From assembly GCF_040938485.1 (NCBI RefSeq), contig NW_027271231.1, positions 496,001 to 560,000 of the forward strand: 64,000 nt of DNA, written 5' to 3'. The notes beneath the pieces were generated by a model. It saw nothing but the letters and a program-made list of their open reading frames with translations, did no database searches and was not told where the DNA came from. The translations under genes were made by a program, and so were the position numbers. This document shows positions 6,063 through 58,760 of the stretch, in pieces. This DNA is from Diadema antillarum. Its lineage: Eukaryota. The first letter of the stretch is position 1. The number at the start of each line of letters is the position of its first letter.

Positions 6063-6641
6063 CAGTGCAAAAAGTCTGGTGTTAAATTTCCTGAGCTCAT
6101 TTGTGGTGTTAGATTTCCGGCGCTCATTTGTGGTGTTAAATTTCCGGTGCTCATTTGTGGTGTTAGATTAACACCTCTGGGTGTCACTTCAAAATGAAAA
6201 AAAAAAACCAAAACAACTGTTTTCGAATAGTTACTTGGTTACTGTTCTTCTTGTTGATTTTGAACTTCAAAAAGACAGTCCAGAACTGTCTGGTAGTATA
6301 CTTGATTTCTTTTTTTAAAGATGTGAACACATTTACACCACATTAACACCAGTTGGTGGGGTCTCCTGGTGACACTGGGCAGGTGTTATACCAATGACAT
6401 TAACACCAGCAATATTGAATCAGCAACATGCAGTGTCATTGTTGTATCAACACCAGCGCAGTGTTACAAATATCACCACCTACAGTGTCAAATTAACACC
6501 ACAAAGTGCCAGGTGAACACTTTTCAACACTATCACAACATAATACTTTCTACACCTGTCGGTGTGGTCCTTTATTGACACTTGATTGGTGTTAGATTTA
6601 ACACCCATGGTGTTAAATCTTACATCGATATTTTTGCAGTG
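6063..6641. mobile_element. Non-autonomous CACTA/EnSpm-like DNA element with 27-bp subterminal tandem repeats
   Basis: Ends CAGTGCAAAAA / TTTTTGCAGTG (CACTGCAAAAA on the - strand), flanked by TA on both sides. About 3.5 copies of a 27-bp unit (GGTGTTARATTTCCNGNGCTCATTTGT) at 6078-6176 and many AACACC/GGTGTT motifs in both orientations. Confidence 0.6.
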
Positions 6642-7489
6642 TAGAAAAAAGATCACGAACCAACAACAAAAACTTCAGCTCCTAGTTGAATTCATGATAG
6701 AGGGGAGGGGAGGGGTCTCGATTGTCCGACAATATGATGCGCTAATAAAAAGCACGTGTTCGGGGTCAGGGTGAAGGTTGCCAGGGACCCCCAGGCCGCT
6801 CCTGGCCCGGAGAACCTTGTCTCGTGTACCGGCCCCCCTCAGCTGATCAGTCAGTCCCACCGCTGTCCAGAGTTCTTCGCCGAAGAAAACTATGGGGTCT
6901 TGTAGAGACTCGCCTTAACTTCGGGAAGAGTGGGGCGTAAAGATTCTGACTATGTTTTGTGTTTGTTTTGTCTTGCTTTCTGTTAATTTGTCCTTTGAGC
7001 TGACCATTAGAAATCGAAGGAGAAAAATACCGGGCGGTAAACACGCTCTCAAAGAACGCGGTGATGTTGCGTAGCCAGGTCACGGAACATCGGTCGGTGC
7101 ATTGTAGGAACAGGATGTAAACAAGTGGTGTTTGCGGTGGTTGGATGACCAGGGGTCTAGGGACATTTGAGGGCGCCACAATTTAGGGTAGGTGGTAGGC
7201 AGAAGACATGGACAAAGTCCCGATCGACGTGTGTTTCGAAAGTTGACGTGCCATGTTAGGGAGTGATAATAACATATTGTCAGACATGGAATACCATGTA
7301 AGAGTGAACGTGCCGCCGGAATACGGCCTGCCGAAAATTCTTTGAAATATGGTCTTAATTCACGAGCCAAGAGGGTTACGAAGGGGGAGTAATACATCAT
7401 GGATTACGAATTCGAATAAAAGAAAAGCCCTTAAGCTGTTCAGTCGGTCTTCCCAGTCTTAAAGCGAGAAGAATCATATGCGAGATAGA

Positions 7490-8851
7490 AAGAGAGAGAC
7501 GGAGAGAGGGAGAGGGAGAGAGAGAAAGAGAAAGGGGGATAGAGAAGTACATAATTATAAACGCACGGTATTGGTCGAATGTTTTGTTACTGAGTGGTTT
7601 ATGCTCAGTCACGAGGCCGCGCCCACGTCGTGCGTGATTGGTCGACGCGGTGACAATGGAGGAACCTGTGTGCAGGCAGGCGAACAAGGCGTTGCTCCCT
7701 GACTTTGCCATCACCTTAATGGTTTCCCTCTTTTTTCTCCCTTTGACCCCCTCTGTCACACACTTTTCTTTTCGCCCTTATCATCGCGTATCTCTTGCCA
7801 CACTTAATGAGGCACGTGGATCCAACCATTCGCTATCATCTCGGGTGTCATCAGTGAGAACAGTGCCCCAAGTCATCGGGATTTTACGTGCCGAGCCGCC
7901 TGGTTCTTTCGATTTGCAGCTTAATCTCGTTATTGGATATTTCAAGGGTAATTAATCGAATATCTGCACTACTGTTCGTCGACGATGCCGATCACCTCCT
8001 CTCGTCTGCTTTACGTTTGAAGTTTTGCTTCATTTGAAAAAAAAAGGAGAGAATTATGGATGTTCACTGCACGGTGATCAGCGTGAAAGAAGTGGCGTCG
8101 AAATAATTTCATCAGTCTGACTGTGGATTTATTCACCGGAGTGGGTCGTATCTGTTTGCCTCAGCCTGTGAAATACATTCTACGGAATACAATATTGAAA
8201 GCGTTTATCTTCGAATGTGTGTGTATAGAATTTGTGAAATTGCAAAGTAAGTGCTGTGTCGCCCCAAAATCTCTTCGAAATTGATGGTAATTTCTGCTTG
8301 GGAAGGAGTCGGGAGAGTTTATCTGCTCTAAAAAGTACATTAGTTACTGGCGTGAGTGTGAGCGTATGCAGCATTCCGCCACGGTGCGTTTGTAACTGAA
8401 GACCTAGCGGACCGGGTCCGATGTCATGTTGTAAGCACTCGGCACAAAAGTGCAGCAGATGATGGCGCAGCCAGGTGAATCGGGACCCATGGATAGGCTA
8501 TCCCCAGCGGACTCGGCCGAGAGCTCCGGAACAAGCCCGTGTTATAGGAGAGTCGGTAGGGGCTCCTCCTGTCACAGATATGACACCTGTCCCAAGGTGC
8601 GCATCTCTCGGCGCGCGGCGCATTACGCGGAGTCTTCATTAACCGCGACCTCGACCCCAACTTCAGTGCATCCGTGCGCGTCACACGCGCATAATCAAAC
8701 AAACTCGACGACAACGAGGAGAGCTGGCGAGAGACACGCCAATCTGCGGCGGGTGCCGTCGCACACGGACACTGACTCGGTGTGCTCTTTGAACTCGGGC
8801 TGCGTGCGTCTTTCTCGAACGGCGTCGCTATGGCCGTGGCCGACCCAAAGG
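7490..8851 (+). promoter_or_regulatory. Probable promoter and long CpG-rich 5' leader of the VEGF gene
   Basis: GA-rich tract ~7490-7545; ATTGGTCGA (inverted CCAAT box) twice, at 7570 and 7637; CACGTC/TGCGTG at 7624-7636 and CACGTG at 7813-7818 (RCGTG/E-box cores); GC- and CpG-rich up to exon 1. The TSS cannot be placed from sequence alone. Confidence 0.55.
8459..8851 (+). other. In-frame upstream ATG-initiated extension (131 aa) of VEGF exon 1
   Basis: Frame is open from the TAA at 8432-8434 to the exon-1 donor, with in-frame ATGs at 8459, 8462 and 8489. Translation is not demonstrated. Confidence 0.4.
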
Positions 8852-8956
8852 ATGTATATGGGAAATAATAAGCCGTGGACTGTTGGCGTAGCTATCTACC
8901 TCCTCGTTCTCGTCCTATCACAGCATGTGCTCGCTTCAGACAGCTCACCTGTTTCG
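8852..8956 (+). CDS. vegf: VEGF/PDGF-family growth factor, coding exon 1 (signal peptide MYMGNNKPWTVGVAIYLLVLVLSQHVLA-SDSSPVS)
   Basis: ATG at 8852 (aaggATGt, A at -3), second in-frame ATG at 8858; hydrophobic core VGVAIYLLVLVL followed by VLA-S cleavage motif; 105 nt ending at donor TCG|GTAAGT, phase 0, in frame with exon 2. Confidence 0.88.
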
Positions 8957-11900
8957 GTAAGTACCGACATTTCTCATATGTAAAGCAACGGAGGAGGACT
9001 ACTTTAAGAGGTTGTTCTTCCAGTGCTTCTACTATCACCTCGCCCCTTTCGCCGACTTATATTCTTGTTTATTGGTAAGAGGTAGTAATAGTAGTGAGCG
9101 CATGCAGCGCCACTCACATCATGTTCATCCTTATTTCATACGAGTCTGTTCAACTGTTGCATCCATTTCCAGGACTGATTCTCAATGGTCATGTTCTTAA
9201 TCATGTTGTGACAAAGCAGACACACACACACACACACACACACCCTCACCCTCACACGCAAGTACATGCACACATACAATGAAGACGCCACATTTTGCAA
9301 ACATTGCCGTGTTCTCAATGACTCGCGTTATGTATAGCATATTTTTGTCTCCATAAGTACGGTCGTATAGACCGTGTCACGCAACCTGGTGCTAGACGTT
9401 GGAACTCGGGTGGGCTAAAGTTTTGGTGGCTTCTGCAAACCGATAGCTGCGAGTTGTTTGGTGTGGAATAATAATAGCAATAGTAGTTGAGCTTCTGTAG
9501 CGCGTATAACAAATCAATGTTCCCTATGAGCTTTAAAATATATTATTATCATCCATTTTACAAACACAGTAACACAGAGACATATTGACAAATTACAATC
9601 CTAATGACAAATTCATTTCATTGCCTTGCAGGAAGAGAACGTAACTCTCTCCTGCGTGTTCTTTCTTGAAAGAGGAAATTCATTCTGAACATGATGTAGT
9701 CATGGCAGTAAATATATCAAGAAAAAGAAAGAGAGAGAAAGAAAACAAAATGATCAATGTTCACTTTAATATCAGCCATCGGTGCATTAAATGCAAAATA
9801 CACGACATTGCCAAACAAGCGCTCCCTAGCACACATCCTATAGCGTTAGAAAAGGAACTCTCGCTTTCTTCTCTCGACTTCCCACAAAAAAAAAAAAATA
9901 AAAAATCAGGAGGATCTCGTTCATTGAAACCGTCTGGAGGCGAAGAGTTAACCCGGGGCAAACCGCAAAGAGGATCCGATATGAGGAAGACACTATAAGG
10001 GAATTGTTAAATCAGCCATCTTTTGAGAAAAACCCCGACAAAATCGTCACTCTCCCAGACTAGCTAGCCACCAGCCATCCTAATATAACGCGAAGCGAAC
10101 TATTTTTACTCTAATGGAAATTGCAGTGGAAGGTGCTGGCACCGATTCGTTCTTTGTCATCTTCTGTTCCTAGGTCCAGTGACAGTATAGGATAATGAGG
10201 AAAAAACGAACTGACGTTTAAGTTAAATTCGATCAAATGTAAATGTCAGAAAATTGCCATTAAGTGTACATGTGTTTGTGTTTGAAGGGTGATTCATCCA
10301 AACGGTAAATTGGCAATCGGTGTGTATATATAGTTGTCAATCTGCGCCGCAAAAGATGTTGTACTGACTGCCAACGGAGGTCAAAGTTTTCCACGCGGGA
10401 AACGCATTGGGTCTTATTTTCTCGTTCAGTTGTGAATGTGACGCAGCTTTCAGGAGATTTTATCTCAGGTTTTACAGCACTCATTGACTGCGTAACTTGA
10501 CGTCAGTTTGTCAAAAAAATATGACAGCGTGATTGATTAGTGCATCATGTATATTCTTGAAGCTAATGCTCGGTGTCGTGAATGTAATGATATTTCGCTC
10601 TACCTAAAATATTAACGTCTGAGAGGTCTTTCGAATTGCTTAATTGAAAATAAGAATCTCAAGTCAAACAATGCTCGTACAAGCTGAACTTTTGTCATGA
10701 ACTATTCTATTGAATTTCGTCTTGAATTTTGTATCATCTTGCCCTTCAAGATATGATTTCCTTTTGTTTGCATTTCAAAATGGTTATGGCTTTTCTATTA
10801 GAGATTTTCGGGATATCATAGAATAATGCATTCTTTGTTTTTCTTTGTCTAGGATGGAATGACAATTTAACGAAATAAAACAGAAAAGTTCGTATGAATG
10901 GCATGCAGTCTTTAATATTCTGCTTAGATTCTCCGTCTGCGGGGGATCTTACGTACAGCGAAACTTATAGACAACATCGGTTTTGAATTGGAATGTTTTG
11001 TTACATCTGAAAAGAAATGAAGCTAGTGTGTTTTTGTGTTTGTCATTTCAAAGTGTTGCCGTTAATTGTTTCCTTGTGGTTGTAGAGTGGGAAAGAAGTA
11101 GCACGGTCAGCTACTAGTTTAGCTCTCTTATGGAAAGCAACCAACGTTGGCTCTTAATTGCGCCAAAATTTTAGGGCCATAGCTTATAGATAACCAAAAC
11201 TACAAGTATGAATATCCTATCTGATGATTTAAACGTAAATCAGTCCGACTTTAATATACGAAAAGCGTGACATTACACGAAAACAGAGCGAATAAATTAC
11301 ATAAAGCACCGAATTTTGTATGTGTTTTTTATTGTGAAAAGAAAGAGTATACCAGTGCCAGTATGTGCAAAGTAAGAGGACATAGATATCATTTTCAAGA
11401 TATAAAAAGAAACACAGAAGCTTAAAATATCTATATATCTGTAACTATATTTGTAGGCTTATGCATGTCTCTTTTAGTCCTTAAAGTCTTGACGTGGACC
11501 TTTCGTAATTTCTGGCAGGCAGACATAGACTGCCCTAGAAAATACGGCTACTCATCGTTGCTGACCCTATTAATAAAAGAATTGGCGTCGATTTTTTTTT
11601 TCTCTTCTTGCAAGCATTTTGTTCCAATCCACAAATACCCGCCACGTTCCTGCTTTCCCAGACTGCACAGTGCCTGCATTGTGACCATATTCTGCCTCTC
11701 TCACGAAAAAAAGCAACCTTGGAAAGTGCATCACCTTGTGTTCCCTCTCACCCACTCTCCATGCCTCTTCCTCCCTCTCTCTCCCTCTCTCTCTCACTCT
11801 ATCTCTTCCTGTTATAGCCATTTTGTGACGACAAACATATTGATATCAAACGCCATTTCATCACGCTTGCGAACACGAAAATATCCAACGATTCTAAAGT

Positions 11901-54015: not shown

Positions 54016-54988
54016 AGATAGATGAATATACAGATATATAGATATAAAGAGAGAGAGAGGGGGACGTTTGTGATGAGAAGCGGGATATGTTGATCTTTCG
54101 GGTACTTACAAGAAAGTCAGTATGATGGCATACAGATAAGCGCCGTTTTTAAACATTTAAAGTAAGTTCAACATCAGATAGAGCAAAGTAAAACTTTTCC
54201 ATTAACGTATTGTATCATCGGTTGCCAAAGGGTCAAGCCTATAGCTTATTATTGGCAACCGTTCTGTATGGTAATTCATAACATATGTACTGTTATGATG
54301 TCACAAATGTACATTATATGTGTAATGAAAATTTTTCAAATTGTAGAAACTAGCTGTAGTGAGTATCATATTTGTATATATTATGTTTGATTACTAGTAT
54401 ATTGCTAAAAATGTAAATGATTCCATACAGAGTATAAATAAATCAAAGCAAATTAAATCATTGATACCTCACCTGGTGCAAAACAAAATCGCCTTTCCAT
54501 TATTGTCTCATTTTCTTCGTTTTTAGCAGGTTTAATCGCAAATATCTCAAATTTATGAAACTGGAATTAACTCCTTCTTGGGATCTAATTCTTCATTTAC
54601 TCTGACTGGGACGTGATTGTTAACTATGCAGAGAATTGAATAGGCCTTCTGATAATTGATTTTTATATCTGCCATTTCTCCTCCTGTGATCGCTTCCGGA
54701 CAGCCTATAAGCCAAACAAACAGGAACTACAGACAGAAAATGAACAGCAGCACACATACAAAAAGTCAATCATCCGCCATGAATATTTTATACTTACAAT
54801 TTTATGAGTGCACTTTTTTTAGTTATGTATCTTAGTGCATCAAATACGAAAAGAACACAGCTGAGCTTGTCTGATTACAACCCCCCCCCCCATAAAAAAA
54901 AAGAAACTAAGTTGTAACAAGAAGACGGTCTGTTGGGGGAGAATATATAGGAAAAGGATTTTATCTCTTTTTTTTTAACTTGCCGACG

Positions 54989-55113
54989 ACTGCAGAAGCG
55001 CTGTATATCGAAGTGAAGTCAACAGAAGCTGGCAGACATTAATGTGGCTAATAGTAACTGCAGAGGCGCTGTTTATCGAAATGAAGTCAATAGTAGCTGG
55101 CAAACATAATGTG
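54989..55113. repeat. Tandem duplication, 68-bp period, 2 copies
   Basis: ACTGCAGAAGCGCTGTATATCGAAGTGAAGTCAACAGAAGCTGGCAGACAT at 54989 and ACTGCAGAGGCGCTGTTTATCGAAATGAAGTCAATAGTAGCTGGCAAACAT at 55057. Confidence 0.85.
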
Positions 55114-55804
55114 ATGACACATAATAATGAACGTCAAGAAGTGATTGAGTGGTGTCATTATTGGCGGGCTGAGGGAGGAAACGAATGACAAAAGCTGTGG
55201 ACCCGAAATCCTATTAGCATGCCCTGCATATTCCACATTCTTCGTCATCTCTGTTAACAAAAAATGTTAATGTGCAATTCATGTTAGTTCATGATTAGTT
55301 CTCTGCATGGCAATCATGTGTGCGTGCATGTGTCTATGTGTGCGTGTGTGAATTTGTGTGCGTATCCGTGTCGGAGGAAAAAAAAAACAAACACAGGCTG
55401 TCAGTAAGTTGTCAAAGTAGGATGCTATCGCGCATCAAGGCCCGTTGTGGAAATAGTATAGCGCCCTCTACAAGAAGTTTAGCACCGATGAGCGAATGGG
55501 GTTCACGGTTAATGAATTCAGGGAACACTTTTCCAAACTACAGCTCCGTTACATTCTGTTTCGTGAAGTAGTGATCGTCTTTTAGATAGTAAGAATGTAA
55601 GAAATAAGAAAACAATGTTTGCGACAAAACAATATCTTTATCTCATGCAAGCTTGGCTATGTTTTGTTGTTGTTTGTTTTTGACAAAGTGCACTAGCCAT
55701 ATTCCAGTGTCATGTAGCTGTGATTCGAAATCATTGCTTGTTTGTGACAACATCTTGACGTAATTCTTGATTTCTATGTTTGTCTGTGTTTCTCGTCCGT
55801 GCAG

Positions 55805-56025
55805 CGAGCAATGAGTTCATGGATAGAGTGAAGGAGGAGCAGCAGCGCGCCCGTTGCCAGCCGCGTGATCAGGTGGTGGACGCCTACGAGGAGCTGGGCA
55901 TCCCGCGCGGCTACAACCAGTTCATCTACCCGGAGTGTATCGTGGTGCGGCGGTGCAAGCAGGGCGGCTGCTGCCGGGATGACCAGGAGTGCGAGTCCTC
56001 GAGGAGAACCAATATCACGATGAAC
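55805..56025 (+). CDS. vegf: VEGF exon 3 (N-terminal part of PDGF/VEGF cystine knot: CQPR...PECIVVRRCKQGGCC...EC)
   Basis: Acceptor tgtttctcgtccgtgcag|, donor AAC|GTAAGC, 221 nt, phase 1 to 0. Contains the PDGF/VEGF signature P-x-C-I/V-x-x-x-R-C...G-C-C with cysteines 1-6, an NIT sequon and strong codon bias. Confidence 0.96.
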
Positions 56026-56329
56026 GTAAGCATCCTTTTAATTTACAGAGTCACTCACCAGGCTTGCCGATTATATCCTCTCCTCTATATCCGGTCCTCC
56101 CTTCGTTTTAATTTCATCTTGTAACTCAATTGTCCGATCCCTGTATACGCAATACATCAAGTTGAAGCAACAATGTCGTCAGCTCGCATCCAATTTTATC
56201 GCTTTACTCCTTGAGCAGCTGTACTCATGTCCAGATTCTTCTCCTTTTAAACATTCTTTCTTGGAACCTGTTTCTTACCCCATGCAATGGTTCATTTGGT
56301 CGACTCGAGCATTATTCGACCGTTGTTAA

Positions 56330-56401
56330 CCCGTTCCATACGGGAACCTGGTGGCCTGTGTATTAAGTCTATGGGGAATCCAGAATTCAGTATGGAACGG
56401 G
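56330..56401. mobile_element. 72-bp piggyBac-type MITE in intron 3
   Basis: TTAA|CCCGTTCCATAC ... GTATGGAACGGG|TTAA: perfect 12-bp TIRs and intact TTAA TSD. Confidence 0.8.
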
Positions 56402-56830
56402 TTAATTTTTCACTGTTACGTCAGTTGAAACAAAACCTTTAAACTAGAATCACCGAATGTAATATCAATCGTAATTGCTATTTGAGTTTTTGCTATGGCA
56501 ACAGTGGGAAATTTAATGACCAGATCCGTCTTTGCTTCGCATATTGATTAAAAGTTAGAATTGATTTGAAGTATAATGATTGTTGCCAATATCATCACCA
56601 CTTAAGTAAGGCACGACGCAAATTCCGAAAGTAAAGGATGTGGAGTATGAAAAACCACTTTGTGATGGGCACAGTGACATGCTTGGCCGCTTGACACCAG
56701 CAGTGACTCGTTCTCTAACAAAGAACGTAATGTTAACTGACGAACTAACCACCTTTGATTCCCAGATTCCCCTGAAGCTAATCTTCTCGAATTTCTCTTT
56801 GGTCCACTATATCCTCGCCAACCTTAACAG

Positions 56831-57108
56831 TTCTTCATCAACGCCGTGGAGATCACGCGCGACATCGAGCACGACACCGAGTGCGAGTGCCAGGACAAGC
56901 CGTCCTTCTGTCCGCCGCCAGTGATGGACTGTCCCGACACCAAGGTCTGGTCCTACAGCGAGTGCACGTGCAAGTGCCGCAACCCGTGCCCGAAGCCCTT
57001 CTTGCAGGACGAGGACTCGTGCGCCTGCGACTGCCTGACCAAGGACCGCAACTGCAAGAACATCTACCGGGGCCGGCGGGGCCAGAAGCTCTCTCGGGAA
57101 CAGTGCGA
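56831..57108 (+). CDS. vegf: VEGF exon 4 (end of cystine knot HDTECEC plus Cys-rich CXCXC tail)
   Basis: Acceptor ccaaccttaacag|, donor CGA|GTAAGT, 278 nt, phase 0 to 2. Encodes FFINAVEITRDIEHDTECECQDK...ECTCKC...SCACDC..., matching knot cysteines 7-8 and Balbiani-ring-3/VEGF-C-type repeats. Confidence 0.96.
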
Positions 57109-57653
57109 GTAAGTAGGCCAACACCACCGGAGGGCTTTCTGGAATTTTAAAATATAGCAAAAAGAATGAGTGCATAATACCTTAAAAACAACAACAAACA
57201 AACAAACAAGCAAACAAACAAAGACATTGATTGCGATGGTTTTCTTTTGTATCGCTGCTGTCTAATTATCATTGCGTCTGTTGAGAATGAGAAGGGCGTT
57301 AAGTTGTCTCGAACACTATGGGTTTAGTGGCAACTTAACGCCCTTATCATTCTCAACCGACGATTGTTTTCTTTGTCATGTTGGCTTTAAAAGTGCTTAT
57401 TATCATTTTGGTATCATTATTATTTAGTTTGAATAACAATGCAATCTATATGATTAGTTTCTACTATTATCACTGATAATTGCCTGCATCGTAAGTTGTA
57501 TTGCCAATATACTTAAATTTTGATTAACATGCAAGTAACGTAACTATAATGTATATTCAATTGAGTTTGGAATAGTCTTTAGGCGTTTTCCTTATGTCAC
57601 TTAATGTTGTCAGAACTCTTCCGCAAAATTAAATTTCCCCTACACATTTTTCT

Positions 57654-57690
57654 TTGGAATAACGAACCTTCCGAATAACGAACATCACCC
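57654..57690. mobile_element. Terminal fragment of the 19553-20040 MITE family
   Basis: TTGGAATAACGAACCTTCCGAATAACGAACATCACCC matches the right-end repeats of the 19553-20040 element. Confidence 0.6.
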
Positions 57691-57716
57691 ATTTTGTTCT
57701 CCCGTCTTTACCACAG

Positions 57717-57807
57717 TTGCGTCAAAAAGGGTCTGTGCGCCGTGCCTCCGTGCAGCCATTCTACGTTCTCAATACAACACTGTAGGTGTAGTAACTCGTC
57801 AAGCTGA
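57717..57807 (+). CDS. vegf: VEGF exon 5, terminal coding exon (DCVKKGLCAVPPCSHSTFSIQHCRCSNSSS*)
   Basis: Acceptor ttttgttctcccgtctttaccacag|, phase 2 completes the GAT codon. Continues the Cys pattern CxCV...C..P.C...F....C.C; TGA at 57805-57807. Confidence 0.9.
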
Positions 57808-58760
57808 GAGGGACGGTCCTCTCCCGGGACGATCTTCGACGCTCATCACTCATGTTGCTCGTTCGTTGCACCGCTCGTGAAATCTTTGATTTTGGCGCGG
57901 AACGCGGACTTAGTTTATGTCGATGTTGTTGTTTTTTTGTCTACAAACCAGTAGAAATTACAGACTGTATTCTGATCAACAGACGCCTTTTTACACCTTA
58001 TCATCCTTGCCGTGGTTTTGAATTGCGAGAGGGATTGGTCTTCCCGTCCCTTTCCAAAAGATGAGATCACTTTATCTGTCTAACATGGATTGAACCGAAC
58101 ATTCCTTCGTGCTTCGAACTTAAGGCGAACTTACTTCCTATAACGTGCGGAGACCATGCTGCCCTACTTCGCAAGTTCGCACATTTGAAAGATTCACTGG
58201 TTCTGGACGTAAGTGGGCGCACTACCTGGATATTCGCAGTCAGATGCCTATATTTAAAGCCACTGGGCCATAGGGCCCACGACCTGCAAATCTGGGAGGC
58301 ATTTATCGTGGAATGGGACACGTCACCCGCCAAGGCGCTGTACTCGAATCCGGATCCCGCATGATACTAGTATTTGTTCATGTCTTTACAATGTTTAACC
58401 TTGTTCTTCCTGACCATGTATTTTACGGAGTTATATCTTTATTTTTTTGTTTCTCCTGCTGACTCTACATGATATGTTAATCCACATGAAACTTTGTGTA
58501 CGAAGAGGAAGTGTACAGGCGCGGAATAATCATAAACTTTGAATGTCATAAATGTATTCAGTGTCATGAGTTGTTTGCTGCCGTGTATCGAAAAGTCAAA
58601 ATACTAGAACTGGTGCATGTAATATTTCACATTATGAAAAAGGAATGATGTATATATTTATGTAAATGTATCTATTATCGATAAATATACTATTTAATCA
58701 TTGTCTTAAATGCCCGTTTGAGCATATAGCTTTACATTTACGATATGTAGATGATGCGAA
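57808..58760 (+). other. Proximal 3' UTR of VEGF with AU-rich segment (3' end not defined)
   Basis: Follows the stop codon; AU-rich block with ATTTA at 58656, 58692 and 58736. I found no AATAAA until ~60383, so the UTR may be longer. Confidence 0.5.

What the first reader, a model, noticed from the sequence alone, without database searches (positions are those of the whole stretch)
8435..8956. In-frame, ATG-started 131-aa N-terminal extension: an invertebrate analogue of L-VEGF?
Seen: the exon-1 frame stays open for 139 codons upstream of the signal-peptide ATG, with in-frame ATGs at 8459, 8462 and 8489. The extension is Ser/Thr/Arg/Pro-rich and probably disordered. My rough estimate of this happening by chance at ~60% GC is about 1%. 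Established: mammalian VEGFA makes L-VEGF from an upstream CUG, with a ~180-aa extension that is cleaved off and acts inside the cell. Inference: initiation here would place the signal peptide internally, giving a signal-anchored (type II) or cleaved form plus a cytosolic/nuclear N-fragment. I am not aware of this being described for this class of VEGF.
Basis: partly seen in the sequence, partly recalled or inferred. Interest (0 to 1): 0.72.

Follow-up and report, generated by a model that had tools for sequence, protein, structure and literature searches.

The report
Conserved long form of echinoderm VEGF3
The open frame ahead of the signal peptide of this sea urchin (Diadema) VEGF3 gene is not chance: sea urchins, starfish and a brittle star have all kept an ATG-started stretch of about 130-150 codons there, and it evolves like protein-coding sequence, so VEGF3 probably also exists as a long form comparable to mammalian L-VEGF.

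Summary
The frame of the signal-peptide ATG (8852) is open back to a TAA at 8432-8434 (139 codons), with in-frame ATGs at 8459, 8462 and 8489. In this genome alone that is only mildly unusual (2.5-3.5% of dinucleotide shuffles stay open).

The window is a Diadema contig and the gene is the VEGF3 orthologue. Database proteins with the same kind of extension (131-152 aa before the signal peptide, in the same exon) exist for S. purpuratus (440 aa), L. variegatus VEGF3 (434 aa), Asterias (420), Acanthaster (444), Patiria (446) and Amphiura (431/434). The Diadema extension aligns with the urchin ones from the Met at 8462 (tblastn E 1.5e-16).

In starfish DNA the extension evolves as coding sequence:
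- 8 of 8 internal gaps are multiples of three, against 8 of 37 in the flanks.
- Third codon positions change most.
- dN/dS is 0.42.

A crinoid and a hemichordate lack the extension.

I could find no RNA data for Diadema, so the transcription start, translation and processing remain inferred. The long proteins are already in databases, but I found no paper that discusses them. The scan had also noted this stretch separately as "uORFs". I rate it a new variant of a known kind (L-VEGF-like N-terminally extended proteoform), interest about 0.64.

The parts
8421..8462 (+). Out-of-frame 13-codon upstream ORF. Its TGA (8460-8462) overlaps ATG 8459 and abuts ATG 8462 (ATGATG). It matters only if transcripts start upstream of 8421.
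8432..8434 (+). In-frame TAA that closes the frame 9 codons before the conserved start ATG.
8462..8851 (+). N-terminal extension, 130 codons (131 from the adjacent ATG at 8459; a third in-frame ATG lies at 8489). It is S/T/R/A/P-rich, net basic, and predicted disordered. ATG 8462 has A at -3 and G at +4 and aligns with Met1 of the S. purpuratus and L. variegatus long forms.
8852..8956 (+). Signal-peptide part of exon 1 (35 codons, hydrophobic run of 15 residues). The ATG at 8852 is the start of the published short VEGF/VEGF3 proteins of other urchins. Donor GTAAGT follows at 8957.
8957..45846 (+). Intron 1 (about 36.9 kb).
45847..46034 (+). Exon 2. RefSeq P0046 starts at a Met inside it.
55809..56025 (+). 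Exon 3, the first part of the PDGF/VEGF cystine-knot domain.
56831..57108 (+). Exon 4, the end of the knot and the Cys-rich tail.
57717..57807 (+). Exon 5 with the TGA stop.

Best explanation
Bases 8462-8851 are the coding N-terminal extension of a long proteoform of Diadema VEGF3.

Shown:
- The extension and the signal peptide lie in one exon.
- The same arrangement (130-152 codons, ATG with A at -3, frame closed 5-11 codons further upstream) is kept in echinoids, asteroids and an ophiuroid.
- It evolves under coding constraint.

Inferred:
- On mRNAs that begin upstream of 8459/8462, ribosomes start at the upstream AUG. It has a strong context, and later out-of-frame AUGs make leaky scanning to 8852 inefficient.
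- The product is a precursor of about 422 aa. Its disordered, net-basic N-region stays in the cytosol, and the hydrophobic segment acts as an internal signal sequence.
- By analogy with mammalian L-VEGF, signal-peptidase cleavage would release ordinary secreted VEGF3 into the ER and leave an intracellular N-fragment.
- The Met just before the hydrophobic segment is conserved in all seven species. This suggests the classical 292-aa precursor is also made, from shorter transcripts or by internal initiation.
For: - Long forms are in the databases: S. purpuratus 440 aa, L. variegatus VEGF3 434 aa, Asterias 420, Acanthaster 444, Patiria 446, Amphiura 431/434.
- tblastn of the S. purpuratus long form, residues 1-180, hits window 8462-8950 as one HSP in one frame (E 1.5e-16; L. 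variegatus 6.6e-14).
- For the extension alone, Smith-Waterman z is 12.4 and 9.7 against shuffles. There are 34 invariant columns among the three urchins.
- Exon 1 holds extension plus signal peptide in all five genomes. The frame closes 5-11 codons upstream of the ATG.
- The chance that the frame stays open is 0.035, 0.012, 0.010, 0.005 and 0.003 in the five genomes. The upstream ATG always has A at -3, while the signal-peptide ATG has T at -3 in starfish and Amphiura.
- In a frame-blind DNA alignment of Acanthaster and Patiria, 8 of 8 internal gaps are multiples of 3, against 8 of 37 in flanking non-coding DNA. Differences by codon position are 38/34/52, and dN/dS is 0.42.
- A. rubens and A. 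amurensis differ by 1 (synonymous) change in 399 nt of the extension, against 1.4-3.8% in the flanks.
- A second Diadema DNA source about 96% identical has no indel in 8435-8956, but 8 listed indels in the 890 nt upstream.
Against: - There is no RNA evidence for Diadema. The only holders of this stretch are DNA-like contigs that run through the intron. The transcription start is unknown.
- Current RefSeq models for Diadema, S. purpuratus and Lytechinus omit exon 1 altogether.
- Four cDNA-based urchin records were deposited as short forms starting at the second Met.
- RefSeq long forms may partly reflect a longest-ORF rule.
- The extensions of different classes show no significant similarity. 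A single origin is therefore inferred from position and size only.
- I could obtain no nucleotide sequence of exon 1 from a second urchin genus, so the DNA-level coding tests come from starfish.
- Translation, topology and cleavage are untested.
- Published overexpression work used the short ORF, and it is active (PMC6768484).
Confidence: 0.75

Rival explanations
1. Membrane-tethered VEGF3. The long form is the main product on full-length mRNA, and the internal hydrophobic segment is an uncleaved signal anchor. This gives a type II membrane protein with the VEGF domain outside the cell, acting over a short range or after shedding. No free N-fragment is produced.
For: The upstream ATG has the better context, and the signal-peptide ATG is weak (T at -3) in starfish and Amphiura. 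One to five out-of-frame ATGs lie between the two. The extension is net positive, which fits the positive-inside rule. AF2 predicts a 24-residue helix at 138-161. VEGF3 acts very locally in urchin embryos (PMC6768484).
Against: The uncharged hydrophobic runs are only 13-17 residues, with small residues after them, as in a cleavable signal peptide. The short form with the same segment is secreted and active in published work (PMC6768484). A Met is conserved just upstream of the segment in all species.
Confidence: 0.15
2. Conserved non-coding leader. The region is kept as RNA or DNA (a translational control element, IRES-like structure or promoter-proximal element). The open frame is a by-product and no extended protein is made.
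For: The 400 nt upstream of the ATG are as conserved as the extension between Acanthaster and Patiria (0.72 against 0.705 identity). The region is GC-rich, with few stops expected. In Diadema the substitution density in the extension (about 1.4%) is close to that upstream (about 2%).
Against: An RNA element does not require indels in multiples of three (8/8 against 8/37), an excess of third-position change, or dN/dS of 0.42. It also does not require an open frame plus ATG in at least seven species whose sequences have diverged beyond recognition between classes.
Confidence: 0.06
3. Chance open frame in a GC-rich 5'UTR, as is expected now and then among thousands of genes.
For: In Diadema alone, 2.5-3.5% of dinucleotide shuffles stay open. 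The Arg:Lys ratio of 16:1 and the S/T/A/P/G richness are what translated GC-rich DNA looks like. GC at codon position 2 exceeds position 1.
Against: The same feature recurs in four largely independent lineages, and the product of the shuffle probabilities is about 1e-8. There is significant protein-level homology between Diadema and euechinoids in one frame.
Confidence: 0.02

Closest known systems
Mammalian L-VEGF-A / N-VEGF (PMC3783158, PMC9024919)
   Same: Both have an in-frame extension of 130-206 aa directly upstream of the VEGF signal peptide, encoded in what is usually called the 5' leader. Both extensions are conserved among relatives. The mammalian precursor is cleaved at the signal peptide into secreted VEGF and an intracellular N-fragment, which is the model proposed here.
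   Different: The echinoderm extension starts at an AUG in good context, not at a CUG driven by an IRES. No sequence relationship to mammalian N-VEGF was tested here. A crinoid and a hemichordate lack it, which argues for an independent origin in eleutherozoan echinoderms. Translation and cleavage are not demonstrated.
Sea urchin VEGF/VEGF3 as published (Hemicentrotus BAI67115, Paracentrotus CAL91936, S. purpuratus AIG89732, L. pictus AFH77917)
   Same: This is the orthologous gene. It has the same second Met (MYMGN), the same signal peptide, cystine knot and Cys-rich tail, and is 68-70% identical over the knot.
   Different: Those records begin at the second Met. The Diadema gene, like L. variegatus AHC56516 (434 aa) and the older S. 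purpuratus XP_003725060 (440 aa), is open and conserved for about 130 more codons upstream.
Other alternative-initiation N-terminally extended proteoforms (for example PTEN-L; surveys in PMC3105428 and PMC4892431)
   Same: Detection is by coding-type conservation of a 5' leader in frame with the main ORF. Two proteoforms come from one mRNA.
   Different: Most such cases use non-AUG starts. Here the extension buries a signal peptide, so it should change topology or processing rather than simply add a domain.

Membership tests
PDGF/VEGF growth factor family (Pfam PF00341), echinoderm VEGF3 orthologue | A cystine-knot PDGF/VEGF domain scoring above the curated cut-off. | tested here: met
   Exon 3 alone scores 33.3 bits against a cut-off of 27, E 6.2e-8.
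PDGF/VEGF growth factor family (Pfam PF00341), echinoderm VEGF3 orthologue | Best matches are named echinoderm VEGF/VEGF3 proteins, with the same exon structure. | tested here: met
   The top representative is Hemicentrotus VEGF, 70% identical over exon 3. The spliced model reproduces Diadema RefSeq P0046 exactly over 248 aa. The exon order matches the S. purpuratus and L. variegatus proteins.
L-VEGF-type N-terminally extended VEGF precursor | An in-frame extension directly upstream of the signal peptide on the same exon or mRNA. | tested here: met
   This holds for the window and for four other genomes. The L. variegatus author-submitted protein contains it.
L-VEGF-type N-terminally extended VEGF precursor | The extension is conserved as coding sequence among relatives. 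| tested here: met
   Indel phase 8/8, codon-position bias and dN/dS 0.42 in starfish. One-frame homology between Diadema and euechinoids.
L-VEGF-type N-terminally extended VEGF precursor | Initiation at an upstream CUG through an IRES. | tested here: not met
   The start is an ATG with A at -3 in all five genomes. IRES activity is not testable here.
L-VEGF-type N-terminally extended VEGF precursor | The long form is translated, then cleaved at the signal peptide into secreted VEGF plus an intracellular N-fragment. | not testable with these tools
   No RNA, ribosome or protein data are available. The only runs found are DNA-like contigs.
L-VEGF-type N-terminally extended VEGF precursor | Sequence homology of the extension to mammalian N-VEGF. 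| not tested
Its absence in a crinoid and a hemichordate makes homology unlikely.

The most novel reading that the evidence does not exclude
Eleutherozoan echinoderms evolved a bifunctional VEGF3 precursor independently of mammals. The secreted knot domain guides skeletogenic cells. A disordered, basic, Cys/His-containing N-fragment of 130-150 aa is released inside the producing ectoderm cell and acts there (for example in the nucleus, as N-VEGF does). On this reading, two deuterostome lineages converged on coupling VEGF secretion to a cell-autonomous signal, and published VEGF3 gain-of-function work in urchins has used a truncated protein.
Probability: 0.25. Interest if true: 0.8.

Novelty: new variant of a known kind. 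Interest (0 to 1): 0.64.

Why it matters
- VEGF3 is the key ectodermal signal for skeleton formation in sea urchin embryos, and a reference case for comparing biomineralisation with vertebrate vascular programmes.
- If the native product carries a conserved cytosolic extension of 130-150 aa, the signal peptide is internal. Secretion, range and dosage could then be controlled by start-site choice.
- An intracellular N-fragment could give the producing cell its own read-out, as proposed for mammalian N-VEGF.
- This is directly testable in a tractable embryo, using morpholinos or CRISPR against the upstream AUG alone, and tagged long against short mRNAs.
- It also bears on annotation. Current RefSeq models for Diadema, S. 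purpuratus and Lytechinus lack exon 1 and hence the signal peptide. The starfish long forms are labelled 'uncharacterized protein'.

Tried and rejected
- **RNA evidence.** The single run search found no run on record as RNA. X2-X4 are DNA (one contig runs from 7546 to 9526 through the donor site). The 197-nt contig of X1 also crosses the donor. The transcription start therefore could not be addressed.
- **Word search with the 174-aa ORF** gave nothing. A search with residues 1-147 of the S. purpuratus long form also gave nothing. Both blanks are uninformative, because the long forms are hidden members of clusters whose representatives are short forms.
- **Pfam on the extension** gave no family.
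- **My first splice model** (263 aa) missed exon 5 and placed the exon 2/3 junction 4 nt off. I corrected it against RefSeq P0046.
- **Apparent cross-class motifs** (such as PCASH..HNQTNS against Amphiura SHHYHHQINES) are not significant by shuffles or hhalign. I dropped them.
- **Exon 1 of S. purpuratus, Lytechinus and the other Diadema assemblies** lies more than 10 kb upstream of the annotated gene starts, so it could not be fetched. No annotated single-exon neighbour was found to anchor a look-up. L. variegatus AHC56516 is not on any held contig.
- **The 2013 Development paper** that introduced Lv-vegf3 and its morpholino is not held.
- **The N runs** in the window were left untouched.

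Full report
**1. The observation**

Reading 7800-9600 and translating confirms the finding.
- An in-frame TAA lies at 8432-8434.
- 139 sense codons run to the ATG at 8852. That ATG opens MYMGNNKPW plus a hydrophobic core.
- The exon ends at 8956 before GTAAGT.
- In-frame ATGs lie at 8459, 8462 and 8489.
- The local G+C is 0.58-0.61, against 0.41 for the window.

The other two frames carry 3 and 7 stops over the same 417 nt. Base composition predicts 1.3% open frames. In 20,000 dinucleotide-preserving shuffles, 2.5% stayed open, and 0.8% were open with an ATG in the first 30 codons. On this genome alone the feature is suggestive, not compelling.

**2. The gene**

Exon 3 matches Pfam PDGF/VEGF above the curated cut-off. 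A search of protein representatives with exon 3 gave Hemicentrotus VEGF as the best hit.

A follow-up word search returned a 248-aa RefSeq protein of Diadema setosum and D. antillarum (P0046) that is identical to the window's exons 2-5. The window equals contig JBFRCO010000343.1 of GCA_040938485.1 over 13 kb.

The model that reproduces P0046 and adds exon 1 is:
- exon 1: 8852-8956
- exon 2: 45847-46034
- exon 3: 55809-56025
- exon 4: 56831-57108
- exon 5: 57717-57804, followed by TGA

It gives 292 aa, or 423 aa from 8459.

**3. RNA**

Three runs of 'organism A' are DNA: one contig spans 7546-9526, straight through the donor site. A 197-nt contig from an 'echinoderm metagenome' also crosses the donor. 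The transcription start in Diadema is therefore unknown.

The DNA contig is about 96% identical. It has no indel in 8435-8956, but eight listed indels in the 890 nt upstream and more in the intron. After ATG 8459 it has four substitutions in the extension, two synonymous and two not. These low-power data are compatible with constraint.

**4. The decisive evidence is comparative**

Cluster look-ups and sequences show long forms of the orthologue.

| Species | Length (aa) | Record |
|---|---|---|
| S. purpuratus | 440 | XP_003725060.1 |
| L. variegatus | 434 | VEGF3, AHC56516.1 (not a RefSeq prediction) |
| Asterias rubens, A. amurensis | 420 | |
| Acanthaster planci | 444 | |
| Patiria miniata | 446 | |
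| Amphiura filiformis | 431/434 | |

Each carries 133-152 residues (139 and 147 in the two urchins) before a Met that immediately precedes the hydrophobic segment.

tblastn of residues 1-180 of the S. purpuratus long form hits window 8462-8950 as a single HSP in one frame (35% identity, E 1.5e-16). L. variegatus gives E 6.6e-14. For the extension alone, Smith-Waterman scores exceed all 300 shuffles (z 12.4 and 9.7). Thirty-four columns are invariant among the three urchins, in blocks spread from Met1 to the end. Because the blocks are separated by length differences yet stay in one frame, the net indels between them are multiples of three. The aligned start is the ATG at 8462.

**5. Genomic anatomy in other classes**

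Loci were fetched for A. rubens, A. amurensis, A. planci, P. miniata and Amphiura.
- Extension and signal peptide share one exon in all of them.
- The frame is closed 5-11 codons upstream of the annotated ATG, as in Diadema (9 codons).
- The upstream ATG has A at -3 in all five genomes, with G at +4 in Diadema and Amphiura.
- The signal-peptide ATG has T at -3 in the three starfish and in Amphiura.
- One to five out-of-frame ATGs lie between the two starts, depending on the species.
- Dinucleotide shuffles keep the frame open in 3.5% (Diadema), 1.2%, 1.0%, 0.5% and 0.3% of trials.

Taking Diadema, Asterias, one valvatid starfish and Amphiura as roughly independent lineages, the product of these probabilities is about 1e-8.

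**6. Coding tests on DNA**

Acanthaster and Patiria were aligned frame-blind with MAFFT. The extension is 70.5% identical.
- All eight internal gaps are multiples of three (3, 3, 3, 3, 3, 6, 6, 6).
- In four 400-nt flanking non-coding segments, only 8 of 37 gaps are multiples of three.
- Differences fall 38/34/52 on codon positions 1/2/3.
- Nei-Gojobori gives dN 0.34 and dS 0.80, a ratio of 0.42.

A. rubens and A. amurensis differ at 1 of 399 extension sites. That change is synonymous, since the proteins are identical. The signal-peptide part shows 0 differences in 114 sites. The flanks differ by 1.4-3.8% plus indels.

The coding-type pattern stops at the ATG. The 400 nt upstream are equally similar (72%) but have gaps of all lengths.

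**7. Distribution and divergence**

Between classes the extensions are not detectably similar. Pairwise z is below 2, and hhalign gives E 0.42 for echinoid against asteroid and 0.03 for echinoid against Amphiura, over short low-complexity stretches. Motifs I thought I saw across classes are therefore not supported.

In the crinoid Anneissia the frame closes 5 codons upstream of the start of isoform X1. In the hemichordate Ptychodera it closes after 26 codons without an ATG.

The simplest reading is a gain in the eleutherozoan stem, followed by fast divergence with the frame maintained. Independent gains cannot be excluded. I obtained no holothurian sequence.

**8. Properties**

All seven extensions share these features:
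- They are S/T-rich and net positive (+3 to +10).
- They hold 5-11 Cys and 4-9 His.
- They are followed by a 13-17-residue uncharged hydrophobic run.

AlphaFold2 on the Diadema exon-1 peptide, with a shallow 7-sequence alignment, gives pLDDT below 50 for residues 17-115 and a confident helix only at 138-161.

**9. Mechanism**

What is shown: the extension is a conserved, in-frame, ATG-started sequence that evolves as coding DNA.

What is inferred:
- Full-length mRNAs are translated from the upstream AUG. It has a good context and intervening ATGs. The L. variegatus record implies that such mRNA exists, but I could not inspect that record.
- The basic, disordered N-region stays cytosolic, following the positive-inside rule.
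- The hydrophobic segment acts as an internal signal.
- Signal peptidase releases ordinary VEGF3 and leaves an N-fragment.
- The conserved second Met, and the activity of the short ORF in published experiments (PMC6768484), suggest the 292-aa precursor is also made, from shorter transcripts or by internal initiation.

The main live rival is an uncleaved type II, membrane-tethered form.

**10. Comparison and novelty**

Mammalian L-VEGF-A starts at an upstream CUG, driven by an IRES. It is cleaved at the signal peptide into secreted VEGF and a 206-aa intracellular N-VEGF that is conserved among mammals (PMC3783158; PMC9024919).

The echinoderm case resembles it in architecture, but it starts at an AUG and probably arose independently. 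Homology to N-VEGF was not tested.

The long proteins are already in databases, so the sequence itself is not new. I found no paper that mentions or studies the extension. The 2013 paper that introduced Lv-vegf3 is not held, so a remark there cannot be excluded.

The scan had also noted this stretch as 'four out-of-frame uORFs' (s1-220916). Two of those ATGs (8580, 8830) lie inside the extension.

**11. Caveats**

- There is no Diadema RNA.
- The DNA-level tests come from starfish. The echinoid support is at protein level, plus one low-divergence DNA comparison.
- RefSeq long forms may owe something to a longest-ORF rule.
- Translation and processing are untested.

Noticed in passing
window 8852-8956 and 45847-46034; loci L005-L010: Current RefSeq proteins for Diadema (248 aa), S. 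purpuratus (249 aa) and Lytechinus (250 aa) start at a Met inside exon 2. They lack exon 1, and so lack the signal peptide of a secreted growth factor. Exon 1 lies 36.9 kb upstream in Diadema and more than 10 kb upstream in the others. This is likely an annotation gap.
   Followed up: partly
window 46030-46035 and 55804-55809: Two frame-compatible exon 2/3 junctions exist 4 nt apart. Donor 46030|GTGAGT with acceptor CAG|55805 gives ..SSPSNEF.. . Donor 46034|GTATAC with acceptor GAG|55809 gives ..SSRDNEF.., which is the RefSeq form. The stronger-looking donor is not the annotated one.
   Followed up: partly
window 8421-8464: A 13-codon out-of-frame upstream ORF ends in a TGA that overlaps the tandem start ATGATG (8459-8464). 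This is a stop-start arrangement of the termination-reinitiation type. It is relevant only if transcripts begin upstream of 8421.
   Followed up: partly
L002 (Acanthaster) and L012 (Anneissia): Isoform X2 of Acanthaster (274 aa) and X2 of the crinoid Anneissia (256 aa) replace exon 1 with a different short first exon that has no signal peptide. In the crinoid, that exon lies about 8.4 kb upstream of the X1 first exon. These are possible alternative promoters giving non-secreted VEGF.
   Followed up: no
L008 vs window 45000-58000: The same assembly holds a second copy of the VEGF3 locus on another contig, 97.4% identical with many indels. It is probably the other haplotype. The other Diadema assembly (L010) is only 85-90% identical in introns.
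   Followed up: no
window 6500-6650: This is a very high-copy repeat. Summed contig depths reach 64,000-224,000 in the DNA runs, with many loose ends and an inverted joint at 6570/6620.
   Followed up: no
window 9221-9242: A (CA)n microsatellite lies about 265 nt into intron 1. Reads appear cut there.
   Followed up: no
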